A DNA stretch of 64,000 nt from assembly GCF_001194135.2 (NCBI RefSeq), contig NC_068982.1, positions 76,963,573-77,027,572 of the forward strand. Direction: 5' to 3'. A program made the translations under genes and the position numbers. Under the pieces are notes generated by a model. It made no database searches. It was not told where the DNA came from and saw nothing but the letters and a program-made list of their open reading frames with translations. Positions 520-38,800 of this stretch are shown here, piece by piece. The DNA comes from Octopus bimaculoides (Eukaryota). The number at the start of each line of letters is the position of its first letter. Position 1 is the stretch's first letter.

Positions 520-834
520 TAAGTTGTACGTAAATGACATTCTAATTTAACTTATATGACCTTTTTAAATGCAAATATCAATAGCTATACACACACATTC
601 ATATATAAATACACATATATCATCGTCTTCATTTAATGTCCGTTATCCATACTGGCNNNNNNNNNNNNNNNNNNNNNNNNNNNNNNNNNNNNNNNNNNNN
701 NNNNNNNNNNNNNNNNNNNNNNNNNNNNNNNNNNNNNNNNNNNNNNNNNNNNNNNNNNNNTATATATATATATATGAATGAATATATTTGTGTATGTAGT
801 ATACATGTGTGTGTGTATGTGCATGTAGTATATA

Positions 835-3626: not shown

Positions 3627-4057
3627 ATGCTTCGCATATTTGGAAGTAGGCTGGTCCCTGGCACATACTACAGGGGCTCATTAGACTCCCTTTTGAGTTC
3701 TACAGCAGTAAAAACTTTAACAGCAAATCAGAAATGTCTCCATGTAGCCACAAACCTTGAATCTCAACCTGCAAAATGGAAGAAAATTTACTTATTAAGA
3801 AAACTTCAGAATAATGATCTTCTCCATATCCGATGTCTTTCCAAACTCCCTACTATAAAGATTGTCAACCCTCTTAAGAATTCTAGAGCTACTGAGTACC
3901 TTGCTACCAATGAATCTTCTGCAAAGTATGACAAAAAACTTGAATTTGACAACAAACTCCTATATTCAGCATTTCCAGTCAAGCAAAAGATTTCAAAATC
4001 AACAGTTGTGTATTTATTAACACTAGGGTCAATTTTAGCTGTTACTCTCATATATGC
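3627..4057 (+). CDS. MICU1: MICU1 coding exon 1 (presequence-like N-terminus plus hydrophobic segment)
   Basis: Acceptor tttcAG at 3621-3622, ATG at 3627, donor GC|GTAAGT at 4058. Phase 2 matches the next exon. Confidence 0.85.
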
Positions 4058-13000: not shown

Positions 13001-14180
13001 GTTATTTATTTCATCTCTTTTTGCCTTTAGAAGGATTCATTGGTGAGTTTAGTGTCCCTTTTAATATCTCTTTACCTTTTCCCCCTCCACCCCTCTTCTT
13101 TCTTTCTCTCTCTGTTTCTCTCTTTCTATCTCTGTCTCTTTCTCTATTGATCCTACTGACAGTTAACAATTTTTGGTCTTGATACATACATTTGTGTTCT
13201 AGAATCAGTGGAATGCCTTTCTCATGATTAATTCTTGTCTTCTACGCAAGGAAGACAGAATTCATTAAGACTATTTTCATTTCTACATTTTTGCCCATTC
13301 ACTCTGTTCAAATGAGTTTGCATATTATTATTATATTTATTTTTTTTTTTCCTAACTGTTGTTTACAATCTGGTTTTTGCACTTAGTCAAAACTGTTGCC
13401 ATGTAAGAAAAACAACAGAACCAATGTTAATAGTTCTTTCTTAATCATCACTTGTATCAGAAATCAGTGTTACTTTTTTTTATTTTTGCATTCTCCGTAG
13501 TATTTTCATTGCCTGCGGCACTATTATAGATATTTCGCCACACAAGTTTTTTTTTTGTTTGACCTGCCCACCCCTATTTTTAAAGGAATCTTATTAAAGC
13601 AATGATTTTGTACAACATTCATTTCAGTAAATGACTATGATGATAATGATTTCTGTTGATGAAGTATTTTGGGGGTGGCTGGGGTATATTTTCATAGAGA
13701 GGTAATAATGTCAAGTTTATTTTTCATAAACTTCAGCTGGATGAAATTATATTCAGTCTAGACGGATTTGAACTCATGAACTGAGAGATATTGATTGATT
13801 TGACTGCAGTCAACATCTAAATTTATCAATCTATAGTCTCGAACTTTCTCCAATACCCTTTCATCATTATGTTGTTGTCATCCAAATAGTTGCTCATTAA
13901 ACTACACAACTAATAGTCCGTTGGTCTCATTTAAAGTTTATATATATATATATTCTTAAATAATAATAATAATTATAAGCTTTAAGCTTATAAGTATTCA
14001 CCATGTATTGGCTAAAGAAAGTAATTTAATATTGGGGCATATAAGCCCTCAACAGAAAGAAATATATGCCTGAGTATTAGACTATTTTCTTTAACCAGTA
14101 GACTGTAAACACTTATAAGCTTAAAGCTTATAATTATTATTAATAGAATTTTCACTTGTTACCATTTCTTCATCTAATGC

Positions 14181-14229
<49 letters not shown>

Positions 14230-17200: not shown

Positions 17201-20200
17201 CAGTAAGACATCACTATATGTTATAAGAAAAGGGTTTGCAGTTGAAACAGAGCTGAAAGATTTGATGAATCTATTAACCTCATCTTGTTTTTCTTTAAGA
17301 GAATTGTGAGTTGCAATAAAGGTTTGTAAAGTTCAAAAGTAACCCAATCTCAATCTGTACCAATATGTCAGGCAAAATCAATCAGTTTATACCAATCTTT
17401 AAATGAAAATATAATTTTCCAAACAATCCATACTATTACAGTAATAATTGACTGCTTTTGTCTCGGTACTAGGCTGTTTAAATATATATTTCCCCATGGT
17501 CGAGTCATATTAATATAATAGTAGTAATGCAAGCAAAGCTTAAGTTTTTTTCATCAAATATCATCATCCTTTTTCATCCATTCTTTTTCTATGCTTACTT
17601 AGTGTTGGATGAATCTTCTCCTCTACAGTGTCTTGCCACTTCATCCTGTCATTTATCATCTCCTTCATACAGGTTCAGTATCCTGAGAGAAGCTTTTACC
17701 ACTTCTTCTTCTCCTTTCCATGTATTCTAAGGAAGTTTTCCAAATACCAGGAGCTGGTAGAGCAGTGCAAAAACCAGAGCTAGCAGGCACATTGCAAAGT
17801 AATTGAAGTGGGCTGCCAGAGTGTCATCAGGCATTCATTCTGTAAAGCTATGACTAGGCTTGGAGTTACTAGTGCAACAATGAAGGCAGCCATAAATTCC
17901 ATTACTAAAGCTGCAAAGAAAGCCACTAAGTGACTTTTGATAAAGATGATAGACTGGTGGTTCATTGCTACTGTGATGCAAGCTGGGACTTGATCAACTC
18001 TGGTTGGGTCAACAAGGCAAGGGAGTCTGATGATGAAAGACCTGAAACCCCAGAAACATCATTGATGATGCATCCCAAAGCATGCAGAAGTTGTATCTTG
18101 GAACATCACTGAAGATTACCTTTTCTCTTTTTTTTTTCCGTTATATCAATGAAATTCTATGCAAAGCTTAAAGCAAACCGTTTGGTGACATTGCAAATTA
18201 AAAGTGACAGGGTACATCTCCAACCTCTGGAAACTTATCTATTCAGGATTGTCTAGAATTGTTTTAGAAGGAATAGGATCAGTTACAAATTAATTGGCAG
18301 TAAACCTTAGTAGATAATCTGAAATGGAATGTCTGGGTATCTGTTAACATTTTATATATTGGAAGTGAAACATAGGATTTTCGAGCGAGATCGTTGCCAG
18401 TGCCCCTGGACTGGCTTGTGCGGGTGGCACATAAAAGACACCATTTCGAGCGTGGCCGTTTTCGTGCGGGTGACACGTAAAAGCACCCACTACACTCTCT
18501 GAGTGGTTGGCGTTAGGAAGGGCATCCAGCTGTAGAAACTCTGCCAAATCAGACTGGAGCCTGGTGTTGCCATCCGGTTTCACCAGTCCTCAGTCAAATC
18601 GTCCAACCCATGCTAGCATGGAAAGCGGACGTTAAACGATGATGATGATATACACTATTATATTATATCTTATCCAAAACATATAAAATAAATTATGTTG
18701 ATCCTAAATGCTAATCATAAAAAACTGGATAGACAGGACTACTAATGAGGGAACATCATCATTGTCATTTTTTATGTGAACTAGGCTTCTCATGGGAGCA
18801 CAAGACCAAAGCAGAAATGTATGGATACACTCTGCTCATCTCTATTATCTGTTCAATGCAGAGTAGGCTTTGCTGAACAACAGTCCATATCAGATGTTAT
18901 ATGATGAACACTTTGGTACCCTAATAGAAGACAAAAACCCACTTAGTTACATTGATGTTATTGGCAGAAATACACATGAAATTGAAGAACTACCATGGGT
19001 TTTTAATAAGGTAAAGACATTTTTGGTCTGTACCCATTATGAGACCACTTGAAGAAGAGGAGAAATGTTATGTTTATATTGGGGTTGGGGACAGTTTATG
19101 TTTTTGATATTGGTGATGCTAAGTAAGAAAATAGGTTGATACAGGTTGAATAAGTTTATTTATTTTATTTTGAATGTAGATACTCTACAAATATCACATA
19201 CATACCCAAGGCAATATCACAGTCCAGTGACTGATGTAAGGAAGTAAAAGAATATATGTAACAATAATTGGGTCTGAGCCAGGAAAACAAGTGGTCTGTA
19301 CATTGTGATGACAATAATTGTGAAAAGCCTTGATATTCATACAAGGTTTTAGAGCAGACAATGTTAAAAACTATGATCTTTGTAGCTGTTGATTCTGGTC
19401 ATCATCATCATCATCATTTAACATCCATTTTCCATGTTGGCATGGGTTGGATGGCTTGACAGGAACTGCAAGACTAGGGGCTACACCAGGTTCCATAGTC
19501 TGTTTTGGTTTCCATAATTGGATGCCCTTTGTAATGCCAACCACTTTACAGAGTGTACTGGGTGCTATTTATGTGGTACTTTGGTTTTAGGATGTCACTG
19601 CTGTTATGGTGGGTGGGTCTTCTTGAGTACAGCAATGCACCACATATCTCAGTCCTCTGTCATCGCCTTGTAAGGCTCAGTGTTTTGAGATCAGTCTTCA
19701 ATACTTCATCCTGTCTTCTTGGGTCTCTCTTTTCCACATCTTCACTCAACTTTAAGTGATCAGCACTTATTTAACTGCATTTCATTTAGTCTAATTCTGT
19801 TCTTAATTAATTGGGTTATAACTCTCTCCACAACTTTCATTATCTGGACCAGCAATGTGATGCCTCTGTAATTAGCTCTGTCTAAGGCACCTGCCTTTGT
19901 AACAACTAACAATGATGCTGCTACACCAGTCACTAAGGATTTCACCTTCCTGAACAACCTGATTAAGTATATGGGTGACTAGACTGTATCCAACTCTTCC
20001 AGATACCTTAAGCATCTCAGTAGTGACACCTGATGGACCAGGGGTTCCTGTCTTCATATCTTTGATTGCCTTATCTATCAAAATGCTGTCAACTAGAATA
20101 GCTGGTCTCTCTTTTGGGGTCACATGAAGGAGACTCCCTTTTTCCATTCATTCTTCACATTTAGTAGCCTTTCATTGTAGCTCTTCTACACATCTTTCTT

Positions 20201-21629
20201 TTCAGGATCACCAAGAGCATTGTACCATTATCTGTTTGTACACGCTTCTCTCCCACAACATCTTGGTTCTCTCTAATACACTGCCTAGGAATCCGGAACA
20301 CTTCAAGTCTCTGATCTTCACACTGTAAGACAGAGGCAAACTTCTTTCTTTCTGCTTCTGTCCTAACTAGATGCCTAGCTTCTCTTTTAATTATCTGATA
20401 TGGTTCTTTGCTACCCCCCACTCTTCCACTCTTTCCAAGCCCATCTCTTCTTTTTTATAGCCCTATTGACCTCACTGTTCCACCACCATGTTACCCTTGG
20501 TCTGGTGAAAGCTTTGCTTCAACCATAGATTTGGTCTGTCATTTTCAGTAGATTGTTCCATAAGAACTTCCAGTTGTCCTCTATGTCCTATGTCTCCATG
20601 TCTTCCTCCTTCTCTCAAAGACATCATTAAGGACATCTCCTAACATCTACTGTTTGAAGGGTCCTTGAGCTTCCATAACCTCTTTTTCCATATCATTTTG
20701 TATCTCTGGATCCTTCTAGCCTTAAGTTTGAAGTCACTTACCTCTAACCTATGTTGAGTTTTACATTCTTCACCTGGCAAAGACATTGCATTCACAAGCA
20801 TATGCCTATCCCTGTTTCTGGTGAGGATATAGTTAATCTGGCTAGTGTGCCCACCAGATTGATAGGTGATTAGATGGCTGACAGGTTTCCTGAAGTTGAT
20901 GTTGCAAACCATTAAGTCATTTGCATCACAGAACTCCAGCAACTTGTTCCCTCCAAAGCCATAGCCTCAGTGCATGCCATGAAAATATCAGAGTGTTTCT
21001 GACATGGCCATTGAAGTCCCCTGCCACAATGAGAATGAGGTAGTCTACTGAAGGGATTCATACAAATGGTCCTTCTGAATATTTGTAAATCTGACATTTA
21101 GAGCATACTCAGAGATAAATGACATTGTTACATTAAACAGGACTAATCTTAGCTTCATAATCCTGTCACATACCCTAATTACCTCAATCACCTTGTCCAA
21201 CCATTTCTTTGCCAAAAGAATACCTAGACCACCTAACCTATCATTGCTGCCTGCCCAGAAGAACACACAAGCAGTCTGGCTGAGGCTGCCCTCCACCATA
21301 CCTCTTGCACATAGCTCATGTCTACACACCTCTGCTCAAGCATTTCAACAATCTCACCAGACCCACCTTTCTTTGTACTAACAGTGATTGTGACAGCTCT
21401 GAGCTTGTGAACTTGGCATGCCTGGAGGAAAGTTGTTGGGATGTTTTCAGCATCTGAAAAGATGTTTTGCAATTGGTTGCCTAAAGGTAGTGGGTCCTTC
21501 AGGTAAGCAGGTACAAGTACAGGTTGCAGCATGGATTGCATTTTCCTTCAGTCCCGTAAAGCCTTCAAGTTTACGCAACTGCAATGGGGAGAAGCAGATG
21601 AGGGTGAAGAAGAGGAGGGAGAAGTTTTC

Positions 21630-21683
<54 letters not shown>

Positions 21684-24600
21684 GTTTTTATCAAAGCAAC
21701 AATTAGTTTTTGGATAAATGTATGTTCACGAGAGAACATGATAATCATAGCTGTTTTAAATAATGCTGTATAAAGAACTAAATATTTAGTGTGTAGCAAA
21801 AAAAAAATCCGCCTTATCTACCATTCTTGATAAATTTTTCAACAGCACAGTGGTCACTGGACCAAACAATGAGGGTAACTGGAAAACAGTGGTCAAACAG
21901 GAGGATACCATTACTACCTGCTTGACTTCACTAGCAACAGAGTGTAGCAGAAAAACCAATGAGAGGGTTTTTTGTTTTTTTTTACTGCAGCTTGCATGAT
22001 GGAAATATAGTCTCTACTGTAGAAAGCCCAGCAAGGTTTCTGCAATTCTAGTGAATGTTTTTATTAACTGTTTCCGATATATTGAAGCATGAATTTTGTT
22101 TAAGCAAATGACAATCAAGTACATGGCATTCACAAGCCTCAAGAAATATAAAACACTACAGCAACAATGATTGCATTTTGTCTTCAAACAGAGGCTAAAT
22201 TAGTTTCCAATACATCATTACTTGTATGTATGTCAGTTATTTGTCAGTTTATCTGGGCCTGACATTCTCAGATCTGACCACACCACTTGTTATGTCTTCC
22301 TTGATCTACCTCTGTCAGACACACACACAAACACACATATATACATGCGTCATCTATTTACATATCTACTGAGGGATCAGTACAGTTACCACTATGTTGT
22401 ATACCATAAGTCAATGGTATTGAATTCTTGTCACTTCTCAACTCACAGGAACCCAATATTTACACATAAAAATCTCTAAAGTCACTACAATCCTTGAACT
22501 CTAATACAAGAATCACTTTCAGTTTTAAAACTATATTTCTTTTGATATAATGAAAGTGTATGATGGGATGGGGGAGGAATATTTCAATCATCATCATCAT
22601 CATCGTTTAACGTCTGCTTTCCATGCTAGCATGGGTTGGACGATTTGACTGAGGACTGGCAAGCCAGAAGGCTGCACCAGGCTCCAATCTGATCTGGCAG
22701 AGTTTCTACAGCTGGATGCCCTTCCTAACACCAACCACTCCGAGAGTGTAGTGGGTGCTTTTACGTGCCACCGGCACAAGGGCCAGTCACACAGTACTGG
22801 CAACGGCCATGCTCAAAAAGGTGTTTTTTACGTGCCACCTGCACAGGAGCCAGTCCAGCCAATATTTATATTAATAGTTTAATTATTCTGATCATAACTC
22901 TTTTTCAAATATGTATCTCGTTTGGTTTATCTCTCAGGAATATAACTGAGAAAACTTTGTAAGATAAGTAAAATTCATCATCAGCCAAGTGCTCTCCTGT
23001 GTCCAAGGGTCAGCTTGCCAAAAACTCGACAGTTCCCTCTGTGTTGTGCTGCATACACACAATCAGCCAGGCTCTTGTTTCCAGTCCATTCTTTGATGTT
23101 GTCAATCCACAACATTTGTGACAGTCTCTTGCTCTCTTCCTCTCCACATTTCCTGTCAGGGGGGTTTGGGGGCTTTGTGAAATAAACATCAGAGGTACTT
23201 TGTCCCAAGCAGAACCTGCAGAAACTTTTTTAAGGTGTTACAAGTTTTTTGTCTTACTTAATGGTGACTGAGTAATCACATTGTTGGGAACCATTCTGTA
23301 TCTTCAGCAGATATCTCAGAGCCATGATCAGTTCATCCTTTAGCCTGAATGGAGCAGCAAAGGCTAGATTACCCTTCACTTGCAGGAGTTTCAAACCAAT
23401 CTTTTCTACAAGAACTAGTACTGGTGTTGCATGTGGTCCTACAAGTTCAAATTCTGTTTAGAGCACTAAAAATGGTACAACCCAAAATAGAAGATAAAAA
23501 GTTTAATTGAATATGTCTTTAAACACTAGCACTTTTCATTATGTCAAATCTACTTGTACAGATTTACTTTTCTAACCTCTCTACCTTCATCTATCTCCAT
23601 TCCTACAATATGATACCATTCAAAACTTACTGCCACCACAATCTGTATTTGCACTAACATCATATGGCATTAAGGACTAGAAAAGATGAGGTACAAATTT
23701 GTTGCCATGGAAATTGAAATGTTATTGTCAGTGAGCAGATGTACGTTTCAATTTGTGTGTGTATATATACACATACACTGCGCACGCACACACGCAGGCA
23801 TAGCTGTGTGGTTAAGAAGCTTGCTTCCCAACCATGTGGTCTCAAGTTCGGCCTCAACTGCACATCATCTTAGGTAAACATCTTCTATAGCCTGTGGCTG
23901 ACTAAAGCCTTCTAAGTGGATTTGTTAGACAGAATCTAAGAAGCCTGTGTATGTGTGTGTATATATATATATATATCATCATCATCATTATTATTATTTA
24001 ATGTTTACTCTCCACACTGGTATGGGTTCGACAGTTTGACATATAGTTGTAAACAAGCATCATCATTATACAAGCGATGTTGTTCTGCTTCCAACCTTCC
24101 ATGAAAAATGTCTGGCCATGGGGAAATATTACCTTGCTTGAAAATAGCTGAAGGTTGACAACAGGATGAGCATCTGACCATGGAAAATCTGCCTTCTACA
24201 AATTCCGTCTCACCCATGCAAACATGGTAAAGTGGACACTAAATGATGACAATGAATGAAACACACACACTCTTACAGTTTACCTTGTTTTATTTGATTT
24301 GAATTTCTCTATTTTCCCCTCTCCCATTCTTTTGGATCCCAAATCTCTGATATCCAAGTTCTCCTTACCTCTCCCAATTTTTAATTCAACTTTGCTTCTT
24401 TTTTTAATGTCTCTTTATTTAATACTTGTTTCAGTTATTGAATTGTGACCATACTGGGGTACCACTTTGAAGGATTTAGTCAAACAAATCAACCCCAGTA
24501 CATATTTTTAGGTCTGGTTCTTAATCTATTGGTGTTTTGTCAAACTGCTAAGTGACAGGGACAGAAGCAAACCAACACCAATTGTCAACCAGTGGTGGGG

Positions 24601-25397
24601 GATAAATACACATATACTTGTATATAAAGGGCTTCCACTTAATATCTGTCTAACCATATCTACTCACAAGGCTTTGGTCAGTCTGGGGCTGTAGTTGAAG
24701 ACACTTGCCCAAGGTTCCATGCAGTGGGGCTGAATCCAAAAGTACATAATTGCACAAAAAGGCCAAGTATACTTCATTACCTCTTGTGAGCATCTAATTT
24801 AGTTGAACAACTTGAGAAATGTATGTAAAATATGTGTGACTCACACATACACCATTCTTGCAGGTTGTTAGCTCTGTTTCTCACATTTCTTGAGTAGCAT
24901 TTTGTATTTCAAGGGTTCTATCAGCTTTTAATGTTTTACAAAATCAAGAAACGTTAACAATGTCTGAATACATACACACAATCTTCTCTGAAAGAATGGA
25001 GTAAATGAGGGAGCCTCTATGTGGTCACTCAATTTCTTAGAAATAGCAGCAAAGCTCCTTCAAGTCATAGTCTATCATCACTGGAATGGATATGCTGGTA
25101 ATGTGATTCTTCTGAGTTGCATATAGGAAAAAGATGGGATGGTCATGACTAGAATACTTTTGATTAAAAGTCTGTGCAATCAGGACTGATCTAGAGTTAA
25201 ACAACGACTAATAGCTATCCCTCTGTGACATTTGTGCATATTTCCCCCCTCCAATAAAAGTATCATAAAATATATCCATCATCCCTCATCAATGTATGAG
25301 ACTGAGAATTTGTAAAAGCACATGCTTATGATTTCATTGTTGCTATACCACTGTCATGTAAAATCATTTGGCAGCTGTTTTATTTAACCATTCACTG

Positions 25398-25433
<36 letters not shown>

Positions 25434-28400
25434 TATAGAATTCTGCATGGTTTTTATTCTCCATGTTTCTCTCTTTGTCTTTCTAAACTCAATGTACATC
25501 CAAAGTTGAAAGAAACACCAAGAGCTATTCACTGGTATTTGCTCTTTTTACTGCTGCTAAATGTTGTTGTTGTTGTTTTTATTTTTTTTAAATCTTTATT
25601 GTCAACNNNNNNNNNNTGTATTTTTCTGCTTTTATTTACTTCCTTAATCAGAATCCTCGGACACCGAAGGTAAGTTTAAATTCCCCCTCAAGCTGCTTAC
25701 AAAAACAAGGCTTTAGTACTTAAAATACAAATTTAAAAAATCCAGAAATCAAGCATCCCATGGACAGTTTGCCTTATTTAGTTTTTTTTTAGTTTTTTTT
25801 TTTATTATGGGAGCTAAAATGTTTATTTCAAACCCTTTGCCTTAAAAATAAACCCAAACACCCCCTCCTCCAAGAAAAACCAACCCAGTCAAATTTACAC
25901 CTTGAAAATCACTGATGGAGTTGTTATTCCCTTACATTACACTATATCAAACACTGCTTTTGTCCCAACACAAAACCAATATATTGGCTTCTTTCACAAA
26001 TATCTGAATTATGCATTTTACCTCAGCTTATTTTATGCATAATGCAGCAATCAGTGGAATAATATGCCTACATTGGGAAGTTTCTCTTTAAATTTGAAGT
26101 TCAGAATGTTAGAAAAACTAAAACTAGTAGTTTGTAATTTTCAATAAGGAAATTATATGTGAGATTGGTCTCTTGTTGCATAGAGATAAATTACGATTGC
26201 AAGAAAAGTTTGAAATCAGGTACACTCATAAGTACAGTTCTATATTTTGTATGTTGCATGAATAATCATTAGACAAAGATCATACCTTATTTACATTATT
26301 TACATTTGACGGATATTTGTCCTCATCTTGTTTGTTGTTATCACAAAGTTTCGGCTGATATACCCTCCAGCCTTCTTCAGGTGTCTTGGGGAAATTTTGA
26401 ACCTGGGTTCTCATTCCTAAGGTATTTTTCGATGTTGTTATTATTATTATTATTGTTCAGGTCACTGCTTGGAATCGAACTAGGAATCTTGGGGTTAGTA
26501 GCTCACACTCTTAACCACTATGTCATATGCTCATGGGCAATTATGGAATGAATTCTAGCACTTATAAACCTAATATTTTTCTATCCTTCCTTAATACTGG
26601 TTCCCATATGCTGCTCATATCTGTACTCGGTCTGCTTAGGAGGTTGTTGTGTCCTAGCATATGGGCTGCTTCTTTTAGTTTTCCTATTTTTCAGTGATGT
26701 TCTCTATTATTTTAACTTCATCCCACAGGGTGAGCTGGTCTCCATTTTTCCATACATGATTAGCTATACCCGATTTATCAATATCTCCTCATGTCACAGC
26801 TTTGCGATGTTCATCTACCCTTATTTTGAGGGGGTGGCATACTTCGCCTTTGTTTAACCTACCACAGCTGCATAGGATGGAGTACACGCAGTCTTTGGTC
26901 ATATTCTCTTCTATTGGTGGTTTTACTCGAAGGAGATATTTGCAAAGTGTTATATTACTCTTGAATACTGTCCTGATGTCATATGGGCCGCATATCTTTT
27001 GCATCTTTTCAGAGAGGCCTTTCACATAGGGTAAACAGACTGTGGACAGTTTATTGGCCTCATCCTCTCTCTTCTTCATAATTGGAGTGGATAGTATACT
27101 TTTGGAGTAGTTGTTGCTTAACAGATCGTTACTGAGCTTGATCATTTTCTCGTGGTGTGTCTCACAATCACTACTTATATTCTTTGCACGATGTTTTAGG
27201 CACTGAGCAATCCCTCTTTTTACACTGTATGGATGGTGGGAATTGAAGTTGAGGTATCGTCCAGTAAAGGTCGGCTTGTGGTATACGGGCGTCCTGAATC
27301 CATACTTGGTGCGTGTTATTAATACATCTAGGAATGCCAGCTGATTGTCTTTTTTGAGGAATGAAGTTAAAATAATAGACAGAGAACACCACTGGAAAAT
27401 ACGAAAACTAAAAGAAGCAGCACATATGCTAGGACACAACAACCTCCTAAGCAGACCAAGTGCAGATATGAGCAGCATATGGGAACCGGTATTAAGGAAG
27501 GATAGAAAAATATTAGATTTATAACCCCTAAAATTCACTCCATAATTGCCCATGAGCATATGGCGTAGTAGTTAAGAGCGCAGTCTACTAAAGCCAAGAT
27601 TCCGAGTTTGATTCCAAGCAGTGACCTGAACAATAATGATAATAACAACAACATTGAAAAATACCTTAGGAATGAGAACCCAAGTTCAAAATTTCCCCAA
27701 GACACCTGAAAAAAGCTGGAGGGTATATCAGCCAAAACGTTGTGTTAACAACAAACAAGATGAGGACAAATATCCGTCGAATGTAAATAATGTACACTCA
27801 TAAGTAGTTTTGGAAGAAAGGTTAGCAACATACGATGAAGAGAAACAAGAACAAGGAGGAAGGGGCAGGGAGGGAACAATAAATTTTTTTTTTTCTGATA
27901 TGTGAGTCAAATGGAAGGTGCTGACATCTTATTTGAGGACTTGAGCAAATTCAAAACTACATAAAGGTGCTATAAAATAAAGTTTATATTAATGAGTTTC
28001 TAAGTGTGTTATTTATGAGATTAAATAATTTTACAGTTTGAGGTGCTTTACATATTAAGATAATTTTTCTTTTCTTCTTTTGAGAGGTAAGTTTGACATA
28101 CATGACAACAGATTAGGGTTTAATTTTTGTTTTGTTTTTCCTTCCAATGAAAAACTCTGCACCACTGAATATGGTTGTCATGTGTACAAATATTGTCTTG
28201 GATGTGACCTTTCAATAGGACAAGATATTTATATTGAAATCTTTTGCTCTAAAACTTGACACCTTGAAGAATTGGCCGCCTCTGTAGATATCTAAATTAT
28301 GTGTATTTACATGGGAGCAGGTATGTCTGTTTAGTTAAAAGGTTTGCTTTGCAACTACATGGTTTGAAAATTATTCCCACTGCACAGCATCTTAAGCAAG

Positions 28401-30842
28401 TATTTTCTACTATAGCCTTAAGTCAACCAATTGATTGTGAGTGAATTTGATACACAGAAACTGTACAAAGTTTGCCTTTTGTGTATGTGTGTAATTGTTT
28501 ACATTTGTGCTTCTCTGAAAAACTGAGCTACAAAAGTGATATACTGTCAACTTTCTATCAACACATCATCTGGTTCTGTGCTTTCAAAACCTTCACTCAA
28601 AAAAACAGGTAAGGATTCGTAGCAGAAACATTCCTGACTGTAAAACAATAATATATAAAAATTATATATTCATTTTAACCCATGCTAGCATGGGAAAATG
28701 AATACAGCTTGTTTTGGGAAGGACATCCAGCCATAATGACTATACCAAAGCAGACAGTAGAGCTTATTGCCGTTCCCTAGCTTGCCAGCTCCTATCAAAC
28801 CGTCTAATTCATACCAACATGGAAAAAGGGACAATAAATCGTTATGATGATAATGGTATACAGATATTTTAGGTGTATATGTGTGTTTATGTGCACACAT
28901 GACTGTTAGCAGTATTTAGGTAGTATGCACAAAAACTGTTCTGTTTAAATTTATTTCACTGACAGGATAAAAACTGAATAGAAATAAATAATTTTTAGCT
29001 TGAGAGAGGTTATCATATCAGTGAGACTTAGAATTTAAATGTATGTTATACAGCTTTATTCTCCTATATACTGTTGATATCATTCATATATATATGTATA
29101 CATATATATTTGTTAGTCGTCACAAAAAAAGAGAGTACTCCCCTCCACCACCCTCATGAAAGTTATCCTTTTGTAGGAATTCAGAAAAAATTGATAAAAA
29201 GCTTCACAGCGGCAATTATTCATTTTTGTCTTTAAATATTCAAGTCTGTTTAAAGACAGTGAGTTTCTTGTTACCCTCTTTTAGTTATTGCTCTCAGGTA
29301 GTGAGCTTTGAAGATGAGATATAGAGCTAAAATGATTTGGAAGGTATTGTTTTAGACCACAGAGACCTAAAATTAAATTGCTAGACAAATCTTTAACTGT
29401 CTATTTCCATTTTCTTGTGTCAGAATGAGTGGAAGAATAATTTTTGCTTCCACTCAAAATAAGAAAGAGGTGAAGGAATATCCATGATGTTTGTGGCCCC
29501 ACCTGAAGGATAATAAGATTAGTAAGAATGACACACAGAATGAAGTCTGAGGTATGGAATTGGGGAAAAAACGCCAAGGAGAGGATTCTAAATGATTAGT
29601 CAACAATGGCAAGACTAAGATAAGGATTGATGTGAAACTGGTATGGGTTGGTGTGGATATAGTGAATGAAGTGAAGAACAAGTATTTTTCCAATTATTTG
29701 GGTGCTAAGCACTCAATTTGTAAAGAAGATGGGCTTGGAGACAACGCAGTGGCTGCTACAAGACTTAAACTTCATATCCATGGGTTAAAAAAACTTAAGT
29801 AGTTTTATTACAGTTAATACATCATATTTGAGGAGAGATAAACAAAAGAGAATAAAGTTAGATATTCAACTGATCTTGTTTGTTAGCTGGTTTATATATA
29901 TATATATATATACACCCACACATATACACTAAATAGATTCTGTTTATCATAATCATTGTTTTAATGTCAACTTTTCCCTGTTTGCATGGGTCAGATGGAG
30001 TTTATTGGAGCATATTTTTCTACGCCCAGATTCCCTTCCTGTTTCCAGGCATAACCAGACATGTTCTTCACAGAATATTGGAAATGAATGACACTGCTTC
30101 TATTAGTGTCATTCACTTATAACTATCACACAATGTCAAAGCAAGGAGACACAAACACACTTGCATACCTACATGTACAAACATACTTACACATACCTTC
30201 TTCTATCTATGTTTGGTAGTGAACAGGACAGTATACTGGTAGTAATAATAATAAGGTTAGAAGAAATGAAGAAATTGTTCCTTAGTTTATTTACATAGAT
30301 ATACAGAAATTTTCCAAAGAAATAAAATAAAGTAAAATATTTACATTGTTACATTAAAAAATCTTCTGTCTAGTGCTTGAAGATGGTCTGATGGGCTTCT
30401 TTCAGTTTCCATCTACCAATGATGATGGCATATGTTTTGTTGCTGCCAAAGATGAATGAGAACTTCAATAATACTTATGGTCATTCCAGCCATGTCTCTG
30501 TGCAGCCCCAAATTATTAGCTCCATTAGAAAGACCCTCTACATTAACACTGCACATCCATTAAATCACATTTATTTGATTCCTCTCTGAGTATCAAACAC
30601 TTTCTCTCTATAACATCTATATACTATTATCATGTAACATTATTCACACATGCTCAGCTTCCAAAGGCTTACACTTTCAAAAAATAACTTTTTGGGTACT
30701 AAATTTCTTATTCTGTGTGTTACTAACCAGTGCTTTGGTCTTTAAACTTCTCTTCCACATTTCACAGCAACTCTTATTGCAGAATCTTTCAGATACCAAG
30801 TATATGTAGGACCAAATGCCTAAGTTGTAATCAGATGTGGTC

Positions 30843-30883
<41 letters not shown>

Positions 30884-33800
30884 GGAGAGAGAGAGCGCCT
30901 TGTTAAAACCAGCCTGTATACTAAATTTCTTATGAAATTCATTGTGAATCCTCATATTACTTCTTGTATCCCTATGCATAGCTGTGTGTTTGTATCTAAC
31001 AATGCAGAGATATCAAATACATTTTTCAGGTCAACAAATGATAAGTAAAGTTGTTTGGTCCTTAACTAAGCAGTTCTCTTGCAGTTGCATCACGAAACAT
31101 TGAATTTGTGCTTCCATATACTACTCCACCACCACCATCAACTGTCTCTTATCTAACTCTACTAATTTTTAAACCTACCACTGTTCTAGTTATTCAAACT
31201 TCTTCAACCTGAGTTTGTCAACCATAAATCCATGTGTGTGCGAGGGGTACTTTCTTCATCAGACATTGATATTCAGTTATTTCCCTGTCTCTTGCTGTAG
31301 AGAAGACAAAACATTGATTTGCTTCTTGTGTCCACTTCTATAGATAATGACCGGTTGGTTGGCTAGTTTTCTAACTTTCTATTTTTAATGGTAAAAACAT
31401 TGAAGCTGTAGAATATTTACAAGCTGTTATTTTGTTTTTTCTTTTTCTCTTGGGATATTTCCCCCTTGTAAACCAACATATCCATCCTGTTTTCTGCCAT
31501 AATCCTCTAAATCCCCTGCTATGTTTATATGTTTGTACAATGTGGTTGACAAGCTTGCTTTCAAACCATGTGGTTTTGAATTCAGCCCCACTGCATGGCA
31601 GTATGAGCAAGTGTTTTCTATTATAATCCCAGGCTGACCAAAGCCTTGTGAGTGAGTTTGGTAGATGGAAACTGAAAGAAGCTCATCAAGTGTGTGTGTG
31701 TGTGTGTGTATGTCTGTTTGTCACACAAGCAATGTCATTCATTTCCAATATTCTGCAAAAGCATGTCTAGTCATGAGGAAATATTACCTTGCTTGTAAAT
31801 AGGTGAGGGTTGGTGACAGGAAGGGCATCCAGCTGTAGAAAACCTGCTTCGATAAACTCCATCCAACCAATACAAACCTGGAAAAGTGGATTTTAAAATG
31901 TGGATATTATCCTGGAATCAGTTTATTTCTTTCATCCATTAATCTTATATATGGAACATCATAAATAGAAATAAAGATGTCATGTTGCCTATCACAAGCT
32001 TGAATTTAATTATTCTGTTGCCTACTCTGGTTACCTAAGTTAACTATGCTGCAAATAACAAGGTAGGCATGGATGTGTGGTTAAGAAGTTTGCTTTCCAA
32101 CTACATGGTTCAGCGTTCAGTCCTATTGTGTACCACTTTAGTTTCTGAGCGAGTGGCTTCTGCTGTAACCCTGGGCTGAGTAAACTTGTTAGAAGAAAAC
32201 TGAAAGAAACCCATCATGCATATGTATGTTTGTGCCTCCTCGTCTTGACATCACTTGATTGTTGTGAATGAGCATGACTGACATACAAGCAGTGTAATTT
32301 ATTTCCAATCTTCCAAGAAAGCAAGTAAGAAGCATATCCAGCCATAGAAAATATAGCTCAACCAATTCTCTCTTACTCATGGAAAAGTGGACATTAAAAC
32401 AATAATGACGATGTTACACCTGTGCCATTTACCACATTTAACTTACCTTTCTTCCACAGCAAACTGTGTTGAAGTTAACTTTACTGAGATTCTGTTATGA
32501 AAATATGTGTGTTGGTATGTTTGTATCTCCCTACAGAAGGCAGATTGTATAAGTGTAATGTAGCATGGCAATGATTTTGAATATAGATGTGAAAGTCTAG
32601 AGAGAAATGAGGTCATGTTTGATGTGTATGGTTAACTTGCATGAAAGTCAGAGCACACGTGAACTATGAATATGGCTAGATTTCATAGGTACACATTGAT
32701 GGAGACTATACTGATGTGGACTTGGGTTGTCAATGAAGGAGTTCAAACAAAAGTGTTTAACCCTTTTGTTACCAACCCAGCTTAAACCAGCTCTGGCTTG
32801 AGTACAAATGTCTTGTTTTCATAAGTTTTGAATTAAAATCTTCCACCAAACCTAAGTCACAATTTATGTTCCTAACATTAGCTGAATGATAACTAAGTTA
32901 TTTTAGTAAATTCTTTGTTATATTTAAAGTAACTGAAAGAAATACAGAGCATCTCAAAATAAATACAGTAACGAAAGGGCTAAGTCAAATATCGGGATGT
33001 TGAGCCTCATATATGAAATGACAATGGATTAAAACAAGTGGCAATATGCTATATAATAGGATCGACTATCTCAGGCCAACTTGATAAAATGGACACTAAA
33101 ATGATGATGATGATACAAACATACATACCTGTCTTCTGCAAGTATTTGTCGCTGAAATATATCCATTTACTTTCTAGAAATAGTAGTCTCTTTGTGTATA
33201 TTTATCAACAGCTACTGTATGGTTAAGAGGCTTACTTCCCAACCATGTAGTCTCGGGTTCAGTTCCATTTTTTGCTATAGCACCAGGCCATGTGTGTGAA
33301 TAAGCATGAATGCAGATATTTTGCTTGTTGCCATTTAAGCAAAGTGGTGATGATGTTGATACAATAACTGATTGTGTAGCACTTTCAAAGATCTGTGGAA
33401 TATAAAGATCTTTTACTTGAAAATCATCTGGTTATAAAATCCTTTCTCAAAATCAATAGAAATAACTTCATTTTTTGGAATTTTGCTAAAACTGGTTTGG
33501 GCAATATCTTGTGTTATAAAAAAAAACATTTTTTTAATTATTGACCCTGTCATAAATAAGAACCAAGATATCGAGGATATAATGCAACTAGCATGCTGTC
33601 ACTATAAAAAGGTTAAACTTTACTTAATGACACTAAACACTTTATAAATTCATGGAATACATATTGTATTTATGAACACAAACAGAAGGGTTTGTAAAGG
33701 TTGGGTGGATTTAACTATTTCATTATTTGACTTTGTCATTTAGACTAAACATTAGTTATATTACTATGCTTCACATAGTCAACTAGAAATAGTAGTGCAT

Positions 33801-33989
33801 ATATATAATAGAAAAGGATATTTTACCATGACATAACTATAGAAGTTTCATCTCTATGAAACAGTTCTTGGAAGAGAAGCCGTCAAGCATGGTATCCATT
33901 AGCTATAGAGTATATGAAATATAAAGTAAGATCAGTGCTCTTAAAATGCATGGCTTTAAAAACAAAAGTTTAGAATATAGTTTTGCTTT

Positions 33990-34028
<39 letters not shown>

Positions 34029-35786
34029 CCGGAGATGTACTTATCTGGCAAGTGATATGATCTGAGTGTGTTGAAACTAAAACAGTTACAGCATGGAAGA
34101 CACGTATGTACCATTCAAACACTAAAAAACTACTGACTTCTTTTAATCCTTTATTATTTTGTGTAAAAAATTTTCATCGCACTATCTGCAACCTGGTCGC
34201 CAACACAGTTCTACTTGAACTGGTTTAAAACAAGGTTATTAGCCAACATATATAATCGTTCTGACCAAATAAACTGACCCACAACAGGTTGTTGGTGATG
34301 ACAACCAGAATTACTAACCTTTATGGATGAAAAAAAATTATTTAAAACCCTGTGGCCTATATATACTGGACAACAGCCTTGTCTTAAACCAGTTGAAGTG
34401 AACTGTGTCAGTGACTCAGAGATACTGTGAGTAAAATATTTGATGCCAAAAAATAAAGGTGTAATTGAAGTTAACAGATTTTATATGTTTTTTTTTTTCA
34501 AATGGCTAACGTGTGTTCCAAACTGTAATTGAGATATATAAAGGTTTGTGTCTTGTTCTATGATGAAAAATAGTTACTGTCTAGTGTTTACAGTTTTGTG
34601 CATTCTTCTGTAAAGAAATAATCATATCAGGATTGCTGTAAATAGTCAATAATCGTTGATGAATTTCTGAATATTTTTCTTTAAGTTACCCTTGGCATGT
34701 GTAAATTTGCGTTTCGTAGTGAAATAAAATGAATCCAAAAACTGTATTGACTTTCATTTATTTCTGTTGTAGGCTTATGATGTTAGTGCAATTAGTAACA
34801 TTTGGCTGTTAAGCTAATTAATCTAAATGAAATATGTGCATCCATCAATGTAGTTCTTATCATCACCAAATCTCTTCGTTTTTTTCCTTCCATTTTTCTT
34901 TATTCCAGACATTTTTACAGAAAGTAAGATATGATATGAAGAGCAAAAATTTCTTTCTTATCTTCCGTTGAGCATTTCATATAAACTATCTTCCCCTTTT
35001 GTTTACCATATTTCTATTGAAATATACTACTTTTGTTTCAATTAATTTTGAAAACCGTGAAGAATTTAATAAAATATCTTGGTCATGATAACCCTTTTGT
35101 TACCATAGTGAAGAATTTGACTTTGTCTGGGGTTTGGAACATAAATTGAAATTTGATAGGTTTAATTTAGATCACTTCAAAACAGGAAGTTTTTATCATA
35201 GAACCAGAAGCTGTTTTGGGCAGGTTGGTTTCAAAAGGTTGGTTAAGCTAGTATTTGAAACATTAATTAACCTGAAAGTTTGGTGGAGTGTTTTAATTTG
35301 GATAATTTTAAATAGGAAGGATTGTCATAGAACCAGGGGTGGTTTCAGGCAGGTTGGTATCAAAAGGGTTAACAGCAACAACAACAAAAAAAGGAAAAAG
35401 TACAGCTGTAGCCTAAATGTAAACAGTTTTCTTTTAATGTTTGTTAGGCGAGTGGGAATAACAATATTGAAAATACTAGTATTTTCCATAATGTGAAATT
35501 TTCTTTTGTGTTTAGGATGTATCTGCAGAACTTGTGGAAGGGCTCGAGGTATTATTTCATTTGATTGCATGTTGTTACCCACAGAAAACAAAGTGATTTT
35601 TACAATAAAAAAATTCTTTAATTTTTTTTTTCTTGTCAGCAGCTTATAACTTTTAAACCATTGGAGTGACACTTAATTACATTGTTCATTAAGACCCGTA
35701 AAATACATTTTTTTTGTATAATTAATTCTACTTTTCTCTTTCCAATTCAACTATTAGCACTGTGAGTTTTAACAAACAATAAAACA

Positions 35787-35819
<33 letters not shown>

Positions 35820-38800
35820 TCTTAATTTCAGTGTGTCATTTATATATTTTTTAAAAACGTGTTCATAATTTTTGTTGTATTTTTCTGAGTGATTCATAAT
35901 AATTTTTCTAAATTTTGTTGGAAAATGATGTTTTTTAATATCAAGATTCAGGTTACAGAAGATTCAGGTTTTCATTAAACAATATCGTTTTAATTAAAAC
36001 TAGTAAACTATAATTAACAGCAACAGCACCTATTTAAGTAAGTTTTACATTAATTATAACTGTTGATATTTTCACTGTTGTTCACTAATTAAAACATAAA
36101 ATGTTGCAAATATATTTACCCATAAATTATATATTATGATGGTAGTAACAGGAATAATGTTGGAATATATGTGCAAGACAGTATATGTGTGTGTGTGTGT
36201 ATCGCCTGTATACATGTATGTATTTGTGTATAGACATATGTTTATCTTTCTTTGGGCAAATAGTTGTATGTATATGTGTGTTTGTGAAGAGAGTTTTTGT
36301 CCAGATTCTTCAATTTAAAACAGGTATTTCAGTCATTTCCATAATAATTCTGTACCCTTAAGTATTACATTCACTTTTGATTAGAAGGTGAAGCACCATT
36401 GTAACATTTGTTAAGTACTCTTAATCACACGCAATCACCAGGTGTGATCTAATTATTCCTGACATATATCATAGTGCATTACTCTTTGAAAAAATTCTTT
36501 GTACATCACCCATATAATTTGATAATATTTAATGTATTTTTCTTATCTGAACAGGTAATCCTTTGTGAGCAAAATATGTCTGTTTGTTTGGCTGAGAAAA
36601 CAAGTGTGAATTCCTTGAAATTTTGTGTGTTTAGCTTTGCAATTTAAAAAAAAAAAGTTACATTCACAGAACACATTTGTCAGACCAGACCTCCACCCCA
36701 ACTAAAATTTCTTCACATGATTAATCTTTCTCTCTGTCACATCTCTCTTCACTTTTATCCACTCACCATTTTACCTGTCTTCATGCATGATTTCAAGATT
36801 GCTTCAAATATATCATCATCTCACATCTGTTTTCCATGCTGACATGGGTTGGACAGTTCAACAGGAACTGACGAGTAAGAGAGCTATGCCAAGCTCTACT
36901 GTCTGCTTTGACATGGTTTTCATGACTGGATGCTCTTCCTAATGCCAACTACTTTCCAAAGTGTACTGGGTGCTTTTGTGTGTATGTGTAACACCAGCCC
37001 CAGGAAACTAGCAAGACAAGACTCAACTGAGGGAGGTGACTTTATGCCAGATATTGAGAGGTTAGAGTATGGTGGAGGGACAGGAACAAATGTCAGCATG
37101 GAAGACATTAAATATTGATGATATACATGCATACACACATACATACACTACCTCTAAACTAAAAATGCTGTAAAGTCTTGGTGTTACAAAGACAAGGAAA
37201 GTTTAGAGGCAAAGACACTTTAGATGTTATAGAACTTTTCAAGGAACTCTTACTTCATATAGAAGCACTTATTCCAATATTCTTCCAATAAAAAACAATT
37301 GCCCTTCATTACAATACTAAATTAAACCAAAGTACCTTTCAAATAATAATTATTACTAATCACTAAAATACTGAACTTAATTTCTGTTCTTTTCTTATGC
37401 TTTTCTGTTGGAATAATATTGAGTGTATATAAAGTAAGTGGAAATAATATGCCAGGATTTACAACTGAGGGATTATTAAATGAACAAACAAAATAAAACA
37501 GCAATATTCCACTCTTTTTTACCTTATTTAAGGTGAACTCAGGAAAGTATGTTGGTATTACCAACTGTCAATGTCATATATACTGACAACCTTAGTCATT
37601 CATTGTTCTTTAACTATTCAAAGCCAGTCACACTTGTTTCAGTAGAGATAATTCTAAATTTTCTAGATAAAGTAGGAATTGTAAATCTATTCTTTATCTT
37701 GATTTCATTCTAATATAATTCATTGTTAAATGTATTTTGGTATTAATGAAATGTAGTATATAATATCATAATTATTATTAAGGCAGTAGACTGGCAAAAT
37801 TGTTAGCATGTCATTATGTTCTTATTTCAAATGCTACTGGGATCAAGCTTGCCTTTCATAAAATAAAGTACCAGTTAAGTACTGAGGTTGATGTAAGCAA
37901 ATAACCTCTCTCCCCAAAATTTCAGGCAGTGTTCCTTTATCATTATTAATTTATGAAGACTATTGTAAATCTTCATGAAGGTAAATACGCAATTAGAAGA
38001 GTGCAGTATGTAATAAAACACAGATTAACTTTGTTTATTGAAGATTATTTCAACAGTATATCAAGGAAAGAATGCCGAACAGACCAGTTGTGAATTTTTG
38101 AATTTCCATGTATTTTTCAATTTTCATTATTCTTGTCTTATTTTGAACCCGAAAAAGACATATAAAGTCAGTCTGTGTTTTTTTTTTTACATACCATGCT
38201 GTTCTAATTGTGTATTATTATTATTAAAGTAGCAAGTTGGCACAATCTATATGTTCAGTTCAAATTTCACCAAGGTCAACTTTGCCTTTCATCCTTTCTG
38301 GGTTGATAAAATAAGTACCAGTTGAACACTGGGGTAATCCCCATTCTCCTAAAATTGTTGGCTTTGTACTATAATTTGAAATCATTAAAGACAGTGAGCT
38401 GTCAGAATTGTTAGCACATTGGATAAAATGCTTAGTAGCTTTTCTTCTGGCTCTTAACATTCTAAGTTCAAATTCCACTAAGGTCATAAAATACTAGTTG
38501 AGTACTGAGCTTGATGTAAACAACCTTTAAAATTACTGGCCATGTGCCAAAAATTGAAACCATTATTATTTATTATAATATATTTCTTATTATTCTGAAA
38601 TCTTTAGAGCTTTGTTGCTGTCATATCTTTTAAAAATTAACATAATTTTCATTTACGATATTTAGTTTGAATTAAAAATTGACTTCTGTAAACTGAAAGC
38701 TGTTCTTCAAATCTATTTTACCTCAATATTTTTAAACATATGATCTTTCTATCAAAACTTGTGTAATCTCTTTACTATAATCCCTTTATAAATTCTATTT

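What the first reader, a model, noticed from the sequence alone, without database searches (positions are those of the whole stretch)
25652..25669. 18-nt frame-preserving MICU1 microexon candidate (NPRTPK) in the 31-kb intron
Seen: a consensus AAG|GTAAGT donor, a pyrimidine tract with TGC at 25627-25629, a long AG-free zone, and phase 0 matching the exon 4/5 junction (…FDPK|HEDY…). Established: vertebrate MICU1 has a tissue-specific 4-aa microexon (MICU1.1, EFWQ) right after the equivalent FDGK motif that changes Ca2+ gating, and neural SRRM3/4 (eMIC)-dependent microexons carry UGC motifs near the 3' splice site. Inference: this lineage uses a different microexon at the same site, and PRTP matches the MAPK PX(S/T)P consensus, so inclusion could add a phospho-switch to the uniporter gatekeeper.
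Basis: partly seen in the sequence, partly recalled or inferred. Interest (0 to 1): 0.85.

Follow-up and report, generated by a model that had tools for sequence, protein, structure and literature searches.

The report
Annotated octopus MICU1 alternative microexon
The 18-base candidate is a real, conserved, alternatively spliced microexon of the octopus mitochondrial calcium gatekeeper MICU1, but it is already in public gene models, and the proposed MAPK phospho-switch and UGC splicing signal are not conserved in related species.

Summary
Window 25652-25669 (AATCCTCGGACACCGAAG = NPRTPK) has an AG acceptor, a pyrimidine tract and an AAG|GTAAGT donor. It lies in the 30.8-kb phase-0 intron between the MICU1 exons ending FDPK and starting HEDY.

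The exon is real. Splicing 12 AG/GT-bounded window segments, this one included, reproduces RefSeq XP_014771003.1 (Octopus bimaculoides MICU1 isoform X2) residue for residue. Isoform X3 skips it. O. sinensis, O. vulgaris and Argonauta hians carry the orthologous exon as NPRTSK, with intact splice sites and mostly third-codon-position changes. A cuttlefish-type transcript has NPNNRNR at the same junction.

It is one of three cassette microexons in this intron:
- A, (K)DSL, 13031/13034-13042
- B, this one
- [12 protein letters not shown], 35516-35548

In O. sinensis all 12 combinations are annotated.

The site is homologous to the vertebrate MICU1.1 (EFWQ) / MICU1.2 (TE) site, a disordered linker loop.

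The PxTP motif is specific to O. bimaculoides. The upstream TGC is absent in O. sinensis and A. hians. Tissue specificity could not be tested.

Verdict: real and already annotated, with no functional study found in the library searched. Moderate to low interest.

The parts
8154..8191 (+). MICU1 coding exon 4 (..[13 protein letters not shown]), ends in phase 0, donor GTAAGT at 8192
8192..38996 (+). 30.8-kb phase-0 intron that hosts three cassette microexons (A, B, C)
13031..13042 (+). Microexon A, AAGGATTCATTG = KDSL. Tandem TAG|AAG acceptors give KDSL (from 13031) or DSL (from 13034). Donor GTGAGT. TGC at 13022-13024 (-9) and about 90 nt of flanks are almost invariant between Octopus and Argonauta. 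The 12 nt are identical in a Sepia esculenta transcript.
25629..25651 (+). Conserved 3' splice region of microexon B (CTTTTATTTACTTCCTTAATCAG). The O. bimaculoides-only TGC lies at 25627-29, just 5' of and overlapping it.
25652..25669 (+). Microexon B (the finding): AATCCTCGGACACCGAAG = NPRTPK, residues 259-264 of XP_014771003.1
25670..25720 (+). Donor GTAAGT plus a conserved downstream intronic block (TTCCCCCTC, AGCTGC, GCTTTAGT), 75% identical to A. hians. A further conserved AAGCATCCCA lies at 25751-25760.
35516..35548 (+). Microexon C, 33 nt = [11 protein letters not shown] (O. bimaculoides isoform X1). Weak donor GTATTA.
35566..35571 (+). TGCATG (RBFOX-type motif) 18 nt downstream of microexon C, conserved in O. 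sinensis and A. hians
38997..39108 (+). MICU1 coding exon 5 ([37 protein letters not shown]..), starts in phase 0

Best explanation
Window 25652-25669 is a bona fide alternatively spliced cassette microexon of Octopus bimaculoides MICU1. It is one of three microexons (A 9/12 nt, B 18 nt, C 33 nt) in the large phase-0 intron between coding exons 4 and 5. All three are multiples of 3 and are included or skipped independently. Inclusion of B inserts six residues, NPRT(P/S)K (two basic residues, one conserved Thr), into a flexible linker loop just upstream of the first EF-hand lobe. This is the loop where vertebrates insert EFWQ (MICU1.1) and/or TE (MICU1.2/1.3). Inferred mechanism: changing the length and charge of this linker retunes MICU1's Ca2+ affinity or its coupling to its partner subunits, and so shifts the Ca2+ threshold at which the mitochondrial uniporter opens. 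The combinatorial use of A, B and C would give a graded set of gatekeepers for different cell types. Shown here: the exon's existence, alternative use, position, conservation and loop location. Inferred by analogy with MICU1.1: the functional effect. Unknown: tissue pattern and regulators.
For:: 12 AG/GT-bounded window segments, including 25652-25669, translate exactly to XP_014771003.1 (P0250, 560 aa). O. bimaculoides X2 has FDPK|NPRTPK|HEDY and X3 has FDPK|HEDY. O. sinensis X1-X12 cover every combination of none/DSL/KDSL, with or without NPRTSK, with or without DMSTELVEGLE; 11 combinations were read for O. sinensis and the C-only form was seen as O. vulgaris X6. A. hians and O. vulgaris isoforms carry NPRTSK; orthologous exons in O. 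sinensis (L001:22668-22685) and A. hians (L002:14558-14575) keep cag|...|gtaagt, the 18-nt length and the frame. Four of the 5 O. bimaculoides/A. hians differences are at third codon positions (about 0.045 under equal-site chance, my calculation), and only one residue changes; a conserved island of about 92 nt (25629-25720) sits in otherwise unalignable intron; a decapodiform transcript (L004, SRR9970006) has AAT CCA AAT AAC CGG AAT AGG (NPNNRNR) at the same junction; octopus FDPK aligns to human FDGK. (PMC8909990): human exon 5' EFWQ is inserted after residue 181, exon 5'' adds TE, four isoforms exist, EFWQ inclusion enhances uniporter activation, and the loop is unresolved in crystal structures; in the AlphaFold model, residues 260-271 have pLDDT below 50 and no secondary structure.
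Against: No read-level RNA-seq evidence could be inspected. The octopod isoforms are computational models (Gnomon or submitter annotation), although an 18-nt exon in a 31-kb intron is unlikely to be called without transcript support. A search for short octopod transcript fragments found none. No functional data exist for any invertebrate MICU1 insert. The peptide has no similarity to EFWQ, so the analogy in effect is unproven. Human exon 5'' (TE) alone did not alter MICU1-mediated activation of MCU, so a small insert here can have little effect on its own.
Confidence: 0.8

Rival explanations
1. One reading: inclusion adds a MAPK PX(S/T)P phospho-acceptor (PRTP), making a phospho-switch on the uniporter gatekeeper.
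For: O. bimaculoides NPRTPK does match P-x-T-P. Thr is conserved in the four octopod sequences.
Against: The +1 Pro is unique to O. bimaculoides. O. sinensis, O. vulgaris and A. hians have NPRTSK (TCC/TCA), so Ser is the likely ancestral state. The cuttlefish-type insert NPNNRNR has no Ser/Thr at all. MICU1 resides in the mitochondrial intermembrane space (established knowledge), which is not a canonical MAPK compartment.
Confidence: 0.05
2. Microexon B is an eMIC (SRRM3/4-type)-dependent neural microexon, recognised through an upstream UGC.
For: Zebrafish micu1 microexons lose inclusion in srrm3 eMIC mutants (delta-PSI -42 and -17; PMC13281805). O. bimaculoides has a TGC at -25. The very short length and strong donor are typical of this class.
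Against: That TGC is TAC in O. sinensis and deleted in A. hians, and neither has a TGC within 80 nt upstream. The conserved UGC next to a 3' splice site belongs to microexon A (-9, invariant in three species), not to B. Neural specificity was not tested.
Confidence: 0.25
3. B is spliced in only at noise level or is an annotation artefact with no function.
For: No read-level support could be examined here. The nucleotide identity of the exon between O. bimaculoides and A. hians (13/18) is no higher than that of its immediate flanks.
Against: Splice sites, length and frame are retained across Octopus and Argonauta, with changes concentrated at third codon positions. The exon is annotated independently in four species. 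An NP-initiated insert is present in an assembled cuttlefish-type transcript. The surrounding intron is otherwise unalignable.
Confidence: 0.07

Closest known systems
RefSeq XP_014771003.1 (O. bimaculoides MICU1 isoform X2) and its orthologues: O. sinensis XP_029657331.1 (X9), O. vulgaris CAI9717534.1, A. hians GAB1597365.1
   Same: The window's spliced product including 25652-25669 is identical to XP_014771003.1. The orthologues carry the same 18-nt exon at the same junction.
   Different: The orthologues encode NPRTSK rather than NPRTPK. These are predicted models, and no functional or tissue study was found in the library.
Vertebrate MICU1 exon 5' (EFWQ/DFWQ, MICU1.1) and exon 5'' (TE, MICU1.2/1.3)
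   Same: Same gene and the same phase-0 junction after FD(G/P)K. Frame-preserving microexons are used combinatorially (4 human isoforms; 12 in O. sinensis). They lie in a structurally unresolved or low-confidence linker loop.
   Different: No sequence similarity (NPRTPK vs EFWQ or TE). Length is 18 nt against 12 and 6 nt. Octopods have three cassettes. No GCATG lies within 150 nt downstream of B, whereas MICU1.1 is RBFOX2-regulated. The functional effect in octopus is untested.
eMIC (SRRM3/4)-dependent neural microexon programme
   Same: Length of 27 nt or less, frame-preserving, strong 5' splice site, surface-loop insertion. The zebrafish micu1 microexons belong to this programme.
   Different: The defining upstream UGC is not conserved for B. 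Neural enrichment and SRRM dependence were not tested.

Membership tests
Alternatively spliced cassette microexon | Very short exon (3-27 nt; up to 51 nt in the broad definition) with canonical AG/GT splice sites | tested here: met
   18 nt, cag|...|gtaagt
Alternatively spliced cassette microexon | Both inclusion and skipping isoforms exist in the same species | tested here: met
   O. bimaculoides X2 vs X3 (without); O. sinensis X9 vs X12. These are annotation-level models, not read-level evidence.
Alternatively spliced cassette microexon | Frame preservation and conservation of exon plus flanks in related species | tested here: met
   Multiple of 3 between phase-0 junctions. Orthologous exon, splice sites and a conserved island of about 92 nt in O. 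sinensis and A. hians.
MICU1.1-type insertion (vertebrate exon 5') | Located at the junction after FD(G/P)K, human residue 181 | tested here: met
MICU1.1-type insertion (vertebrate exon 5') | Encodes [ED]FWQ (sequence orthology) | tested here: not met
   NPRTPK; no similarity
MICU1.1-type insertion (vertebrate exon 5') | Raises MICU1 Ca2+ affinity / lowers the uniporter activation threshold | not testable with these tools
   Needs Ca2+ uptake assays
MICU1.1-type insertion (vertebrate exon 5') | RBFOX (GCAUG) control | tested here: not met
   No GCATG within 150 nt downstream of B in three species. A conserved TGCATG lies instead next to microexon C.
eMIC/SRRM3/4-dependent neural microexon | UGC motif close upstream of the 3' splice site, conserved | tested here: not met
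   TGC at -25 only in O. bimaculoides; absent in O. sinensis and A. hians
eMIC/SRRM3/4-dependent neural microexon | Neural-enriched inclusion and dependence on an eMIC-domain protein | not testable with these tools
   No tissue RNA-seq or perturbation data available here
MAPK PX(S/T)P phospho-site | P-x-[ST]-P motif present | tested here: met
   PRTP in O. bimaculoides
MAPK PX(S/T)P phospho-site | Motif conserved in orthologues | tested here: not met
   NPRTSK in three other octopods; NPNNRNR in the cuttlefish-type transcript
MAPK PX(S/T)P phospho-site | Phosphorylated in vivo by a kinase present in the same compartment | not testable with these tools
   Needs phosphoproteomics

The most novel reading that the evidence does not exclude
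The linker after FD(P/G)K of MICU1 may be an ancient, possibly ancestral bilaterian, microexon hotspot. Vertebrates insert EFWQ/DFWQ and TE. Beetles, termites, moths and shrimps insert about 4 residues (HGVQ, NHDK, NIDE, SAEE). Bivalves and gastropods insert KD[SDN][LF]-type 7-8-mers. Coleoid cephalopods have three independently used cassettes giving up to 12 isoforms, and B (NP-basic) would be a coleoid innovation. The three cassettes carry different conserved flanking motifs: A has UGC at -9 and a CU-rich downstream tract, C has UGCAUG at +18, and B has neither. They may therefore answer to different splicing regulators and set cell-type-specific mitochondrial Ca2+ thresholds. The 12-nt first cassette (cephalopod KDSL, arthropod 4-mers, vertebrate EFWQ) could even be homologous.
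Probability: 0.3. Interest if true: 0.6.

Novelty: already known. Interest (0 to 1): 0.3.

Why it matters
MICU1 sets the Ca2+ threshold of the mitochondrial uniporter. In vertebrates, a 4-residue microexon at this exact loop changes that threshold in muscle and brain. Octopods splice up to three microexons combinatorially at the same loop, and many protostomes also have alternative inserts there. This suggests that tuning the gatekeeper by loop microexons is a general and perhaps ancient strategy, and it gives natural variants for structure-function work on a loop that no solved structure resolves. The particular exon flagged is, however, already in RefSeq. Its proposed special features (MAPK switch, UGC signal) do not survive comparison with sister species.

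Tried and rejected
1. A 61-aa junction query meant to pull short octopod transcript fragments with NPRT[SP]K found nothing above 67% identity, so no independent read or contig-level octopod evidence was obtained.
2. blastn of the whole intron against the A. hians locus found islands around microexons A and C and several repeats, but missed B because its island is too short. A targeted alignment was needed.
3. The supplement look-up for the 2026 bioRxiv tissue-specific splicing study that includes O. bimaculoides found no files held, and its text does not mention MICU.
4. Literature searches for microexon + MICU1, microexon + octopus, and MICU1 + splicing + Drosophila found no description of invertebrate MICU1 microexons.
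5. I looked for an RBFOX GCATG near B and found none.
6. Other in-frame pseudo-exon candidates in the intron (12462-12500; 17300-17305) occur in no annotated isoform and were not pursued.
7. SRR9970006 could not be tied to a species. SRR20545815 is Sepia esculenta larvae.
8. My first hand-set exon coordinates were off by a few bases and were corrected by an exhaustive AG/GT boundary search.

Full report
**Observation**

The sequence is as described...tgtatttttctgcttttatttacttccttaatcag|AATCCTCGGACACCGAAG|gtaagttt.
- The exon is 25652-25669 and reads N-P-R-T-P-K.
- The acceptor AG is at 25650-51 and the donor AAG|GTAAGT at 25670-75.
- TGC sits at 25627-29.
- The flanking coding exons are real. 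[12 protein letters not shown] ends at 8191 before GTAAGT, and HEDYPELEL... begins at 38997 after ...attatag. Both junctions fall between codons. The intron is 30,805 nt.

One detail is weaker than stated. The 127-nt AG-free zone runs through a 10-N assembly gap (25607-25616). In O. sinensis the gap corresponds to about 39 nt containing an AG, which gives a 59-nt zone.

Is the pattern more than chance?
- In 200 Markov simulations of the intron, the strict pattern (AG, stop-free 3n exon of 3-51 nt, GTAAGT, at least 80% pyrimidine tract) is expected 0.08 times per intron. 7.5% of simulations had at least one.
- The real intron has only five in-frame GTRAGT candidates with at least 70% pyrimidine. 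Three of them turn out to be annotated microexon forms.

**What it is**

The window is the Octopus bimaculoides MICU1 locus.
- It matches GCA_001194135.2 chromosome CM046602.1, including the same gap.
- An exhaustive search over AG/GT boundaries found one set of 12 segments whose translation equals RefSeq XP_014771003.1, [quoted passage not shown], over all 560 residues. The segments are 3627-4057, 5303-5441, 6492-6657, 8154-8191, 25652-25669, 38997-39108, 40797-40879, 42071-42265, 43293-43442, 44091-44199, 45567-45656 and 45904-46055.
- The candidate is therefore an already annotated exon.
- Isoform X3 of the same species skips it (FDPK|HEDY), and X1 uses a different insert ([11 protein letters not shown]).

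**A cluster of three microexons**

The isoforms in the same 90% cluster show three cassettes in this intron.

| Cassette | Window coordinates | Peptide | Features |
|---|---|---|---|
| A | 13031-13042 (or from 13034) | KDSL or DSL | AAGGATTCATTG; tandem TAG\|AAG acceptors; donor GTGAGT |
| B | 25652-25669 | NPRT(P/S)K | the finding |
| C | 35516-35548 | D(V/M)S(A/T)ELVEGLE | donor GTATTA |

- All three are present in the window with splice sites.
- O. sinensis X1-X12 correspond to every combination of none/DSL/KDSL, with or without B, with or without C (3 x 2 x 2 = 12). Eleven were read directly for O. sinensis. The C-only form was seen as O. vulgaris X6.
- Microexon A is not among the O. bimaculoides isoforms listed. 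Its sequence and flanks are nevertheless identical to those of O. sinensis.

**Conservation of B**

I fetched the O. sinensis (L001) and Argonauta hians (L002) loci.

| Species | Exon B sequence | Peptide |
|---|---|---|
| O. bimaculoides | AAT CCT CGG ACA CCG AAG | NPRTPK |
| O. sinensis | AAT CCT CGG ACA TCC AAG | NPRTSK |
| A. hians | AAC CCC CGG ACC TCA AAG | NPRTSK |

- All three keep cag|...|gtaagt.
- Four of the five O. bimaculoides/A. hians differences are at third codon positions. Under equal-site chance this has a probability of about 0.045 (my calculation). Only one residue changes.
- The P at position 5 is derived in O. bimaculoides.
- Identity to A. hians is 21/23 in the 3' splice region, 13/18 in the exon and 38/51 in the next 51 nt. 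It then falls to 34-44%. B therefore sits in a conserved island of about 92 nt.
- A blind blastn of the intron did not detect this island because it is too short. It did pick up the much larger island around A (645 nt, 73.5%) and the one around C.
- Assembled decapodiform transcripts show the hotspot is coleoid-wide. L004 (SRR9970006) has NPNNRNR (AAT CCA AAT AAC CGG AAT AGG). L005 (SRR20545815, Sepia esculenta larvae per PMC9538352) has N + KDSL + ELSSVIEEQMQEE, with the KDSL nucleotides identical to octopus.

**Where the insert sits**

- Octopus FDPK aligns with human FDGK in the solved MICU1 chains.
- In mouse and human, exon 5' (EFWQ) is inserted after residue 181 and exon 5'' (TE) follows it. 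Together they give four isoforms.
- EFWQ inclusion enhances uniporter activation.
- The loop is not resolved in crystal structures (PMC8909990).
- In an AlphaFold2 model of XP_014771003.1 (48-sequence alignment, mean pLDDT 62), residues 260-271 have pLDDT below 50 and are coil. They lie between a short strand (253-255) and a helix (278-282). The insert is residues 259-264.
- From memory, not tested here: this is the linker between the MICU1 N-domain and the N-lobe that carries EF-hand 1.

**How it most likely works**

Shown: B is a conserved, alternatively used, frame-preserving cassette that adds six residues (two basic, one conserved Thr) to a flexible linker at the MICU1.1 site.

Inferred by analogy: changing the length and charge of this linker shifts MICU1's Ca2+ sensitivity or its coupling within the uniporter complex. 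Combinatorial use of A, B and C would give graded gatekeepers.

The regulators are unknown, but the conserved flanks differ among the cassettes:
- A has an invariant UGC at -9 and a CU-rich downstream tract.
- C has an invariant UGCAUG at +18.
- B has neither. It has a conserved C-rich/AGCUGC block downstream.

1. "A different microexon at the same site": correct, but there are three, and they are already annotated.
2. MAPK PxTP switch: the motif exists only in O. bimaculoides. Three other octopods have NPRTSK, and the cuttlefish-type insert has no Ser/Thr. MICU1 is also an intermembrane-space protein (established knowledge). I rate this unlikely.
3. UGC/eMIC: the cited TGC is not conserved. 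Zebrafish micu1 microexons are srrm3-eMIC dependent (PMC13281805), so the idea is not excluded. The sequence evidence for it fits microexon A better than B.

**Wider context**

Alternative inserts at this junction are annotated widely. Each pair below is insert-containing versus shorter form.
- Haliotis rufescens X2/X3: SQTTSREGN vs KDNLFEM
- Oysters: SEDFKQIL vs none
- Mytilus: KDDFRTL vs none
- Biomphalaria: KDSLDDL, with or without DETK
- Penaeus japonicus X3/X4: SAEE vs none
- Diabrotica X2/X4: HGVQ vs none
- Moths: NIDE/NVDE
- Birds and mammals: DFWQ, with or without TE

The junction therefore looks like a bilaterian-wide hotspot. Whether this reflects homology or convergence is open. I found no paper describing it outside vertebrates, but the library is incomplete.

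**Verdict**

The feature is real, conserved and correctly located, and it is already present in RefSeq and other public annotations. Its distinctive functional claims are not supported. Interest lies mainly in the three-cassette combinatorial module and the possible deep conservation of the hotspot.

Noticed in passing
window 13031-13042 (alt. acceptor 13034); TGC at 13022-13024: 12/9-nt microexon A, (K)DSL, with tandem TAG|AAG acceptors, an invariant UGC at -9 and about 90 nt of almost invariant flanks across Octopus and Argonauta. The 12 nt are identical in a Sepia esculenta transcript. It is not among the O. bimaculoides isoforms listed (X1-X3), although the DNA is identical to O. sinensis, so O. 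bimaculoides is probably under-annotated here.
   Followed up: partly
window 35516-35548 and 35566-35571: 33-nt microexon C ([11 protein letters not shown]; A. hians DFTDELYEELE) with a weak GTATTA donor and a conserved TGCATG 18 nt downstream. This suggests RBFOX-type control, as shown for vertebrate MICU1.1.
   Followed up: partly
proteins P0129-P0239, P0003, P0043 etc.: Annotated isoform pairs with and without short inserts at the same FD(P/G)K junction occur in gastropods, bivalves, crustaceans, beetles, moths and vertebrates. This may be an ancient microexon hotspot. Molluscan inserts often start KD[SDN][LF].
   Followed up: partly
L004 and L005 (decapodiform transcripts); P0259, P0260: Cuttlefish-type transcripts carry an extra Asn codon (AAC/AAT) directly after FDPK whenever any insert is present, and sometimes alone (FDPK|N|HDEY). 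The source of this 3-nt difference is unexplained; it could be an alternative splice site or a 3-nt exon.
   Followed up: no
window 26789-27559 (-): A 256-aa ORF about 1.1 kb downstream of microexon B resembles, from memory, a retroelement reverse-transcriptase tail with a GIY-YIG-like motif (..[10 protein letters not shown]..), possibly a Penelope-like element fragment. No family search was run.
   Followed up: no
window 48327-48872 (-): An ORF with a Gly/Tyr-rich tract and ..[19 protein letters not shown].. looks, from memory, like an hnRNP F/H-type RRM exon of a neighbouring gene on the minus strand, downstream of MICU1. No search was run.
   Followed up: no
window 15353-15491, 18497-18649, 22584-22744: Segments of about 140-160 nt inside the big intron each hit 5-8 places in the A. 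hians locus on both strands (68-74% identity). This is probably an interspersed SINE-like repeat shared by octopods.
   Followed up: no
window 34553-34795: A colinear 243-nt block conserved with A. hians (L002:17903-18168, 67%) lies about 750 nt upstream of microexon C. It matches no annotated exon. It may be an intronic regulatory element or an old repeat.
   Followed up: no
window 657-760, 7184-7953, 16688-16814, 25607-25616, 47775-48065, 52610-52780: Six assembly gaps (N runs). The 10-N gap 35 nt upstream of microexon B hides about 39 nt that are present in O. sinensis.
   Followed up: yes
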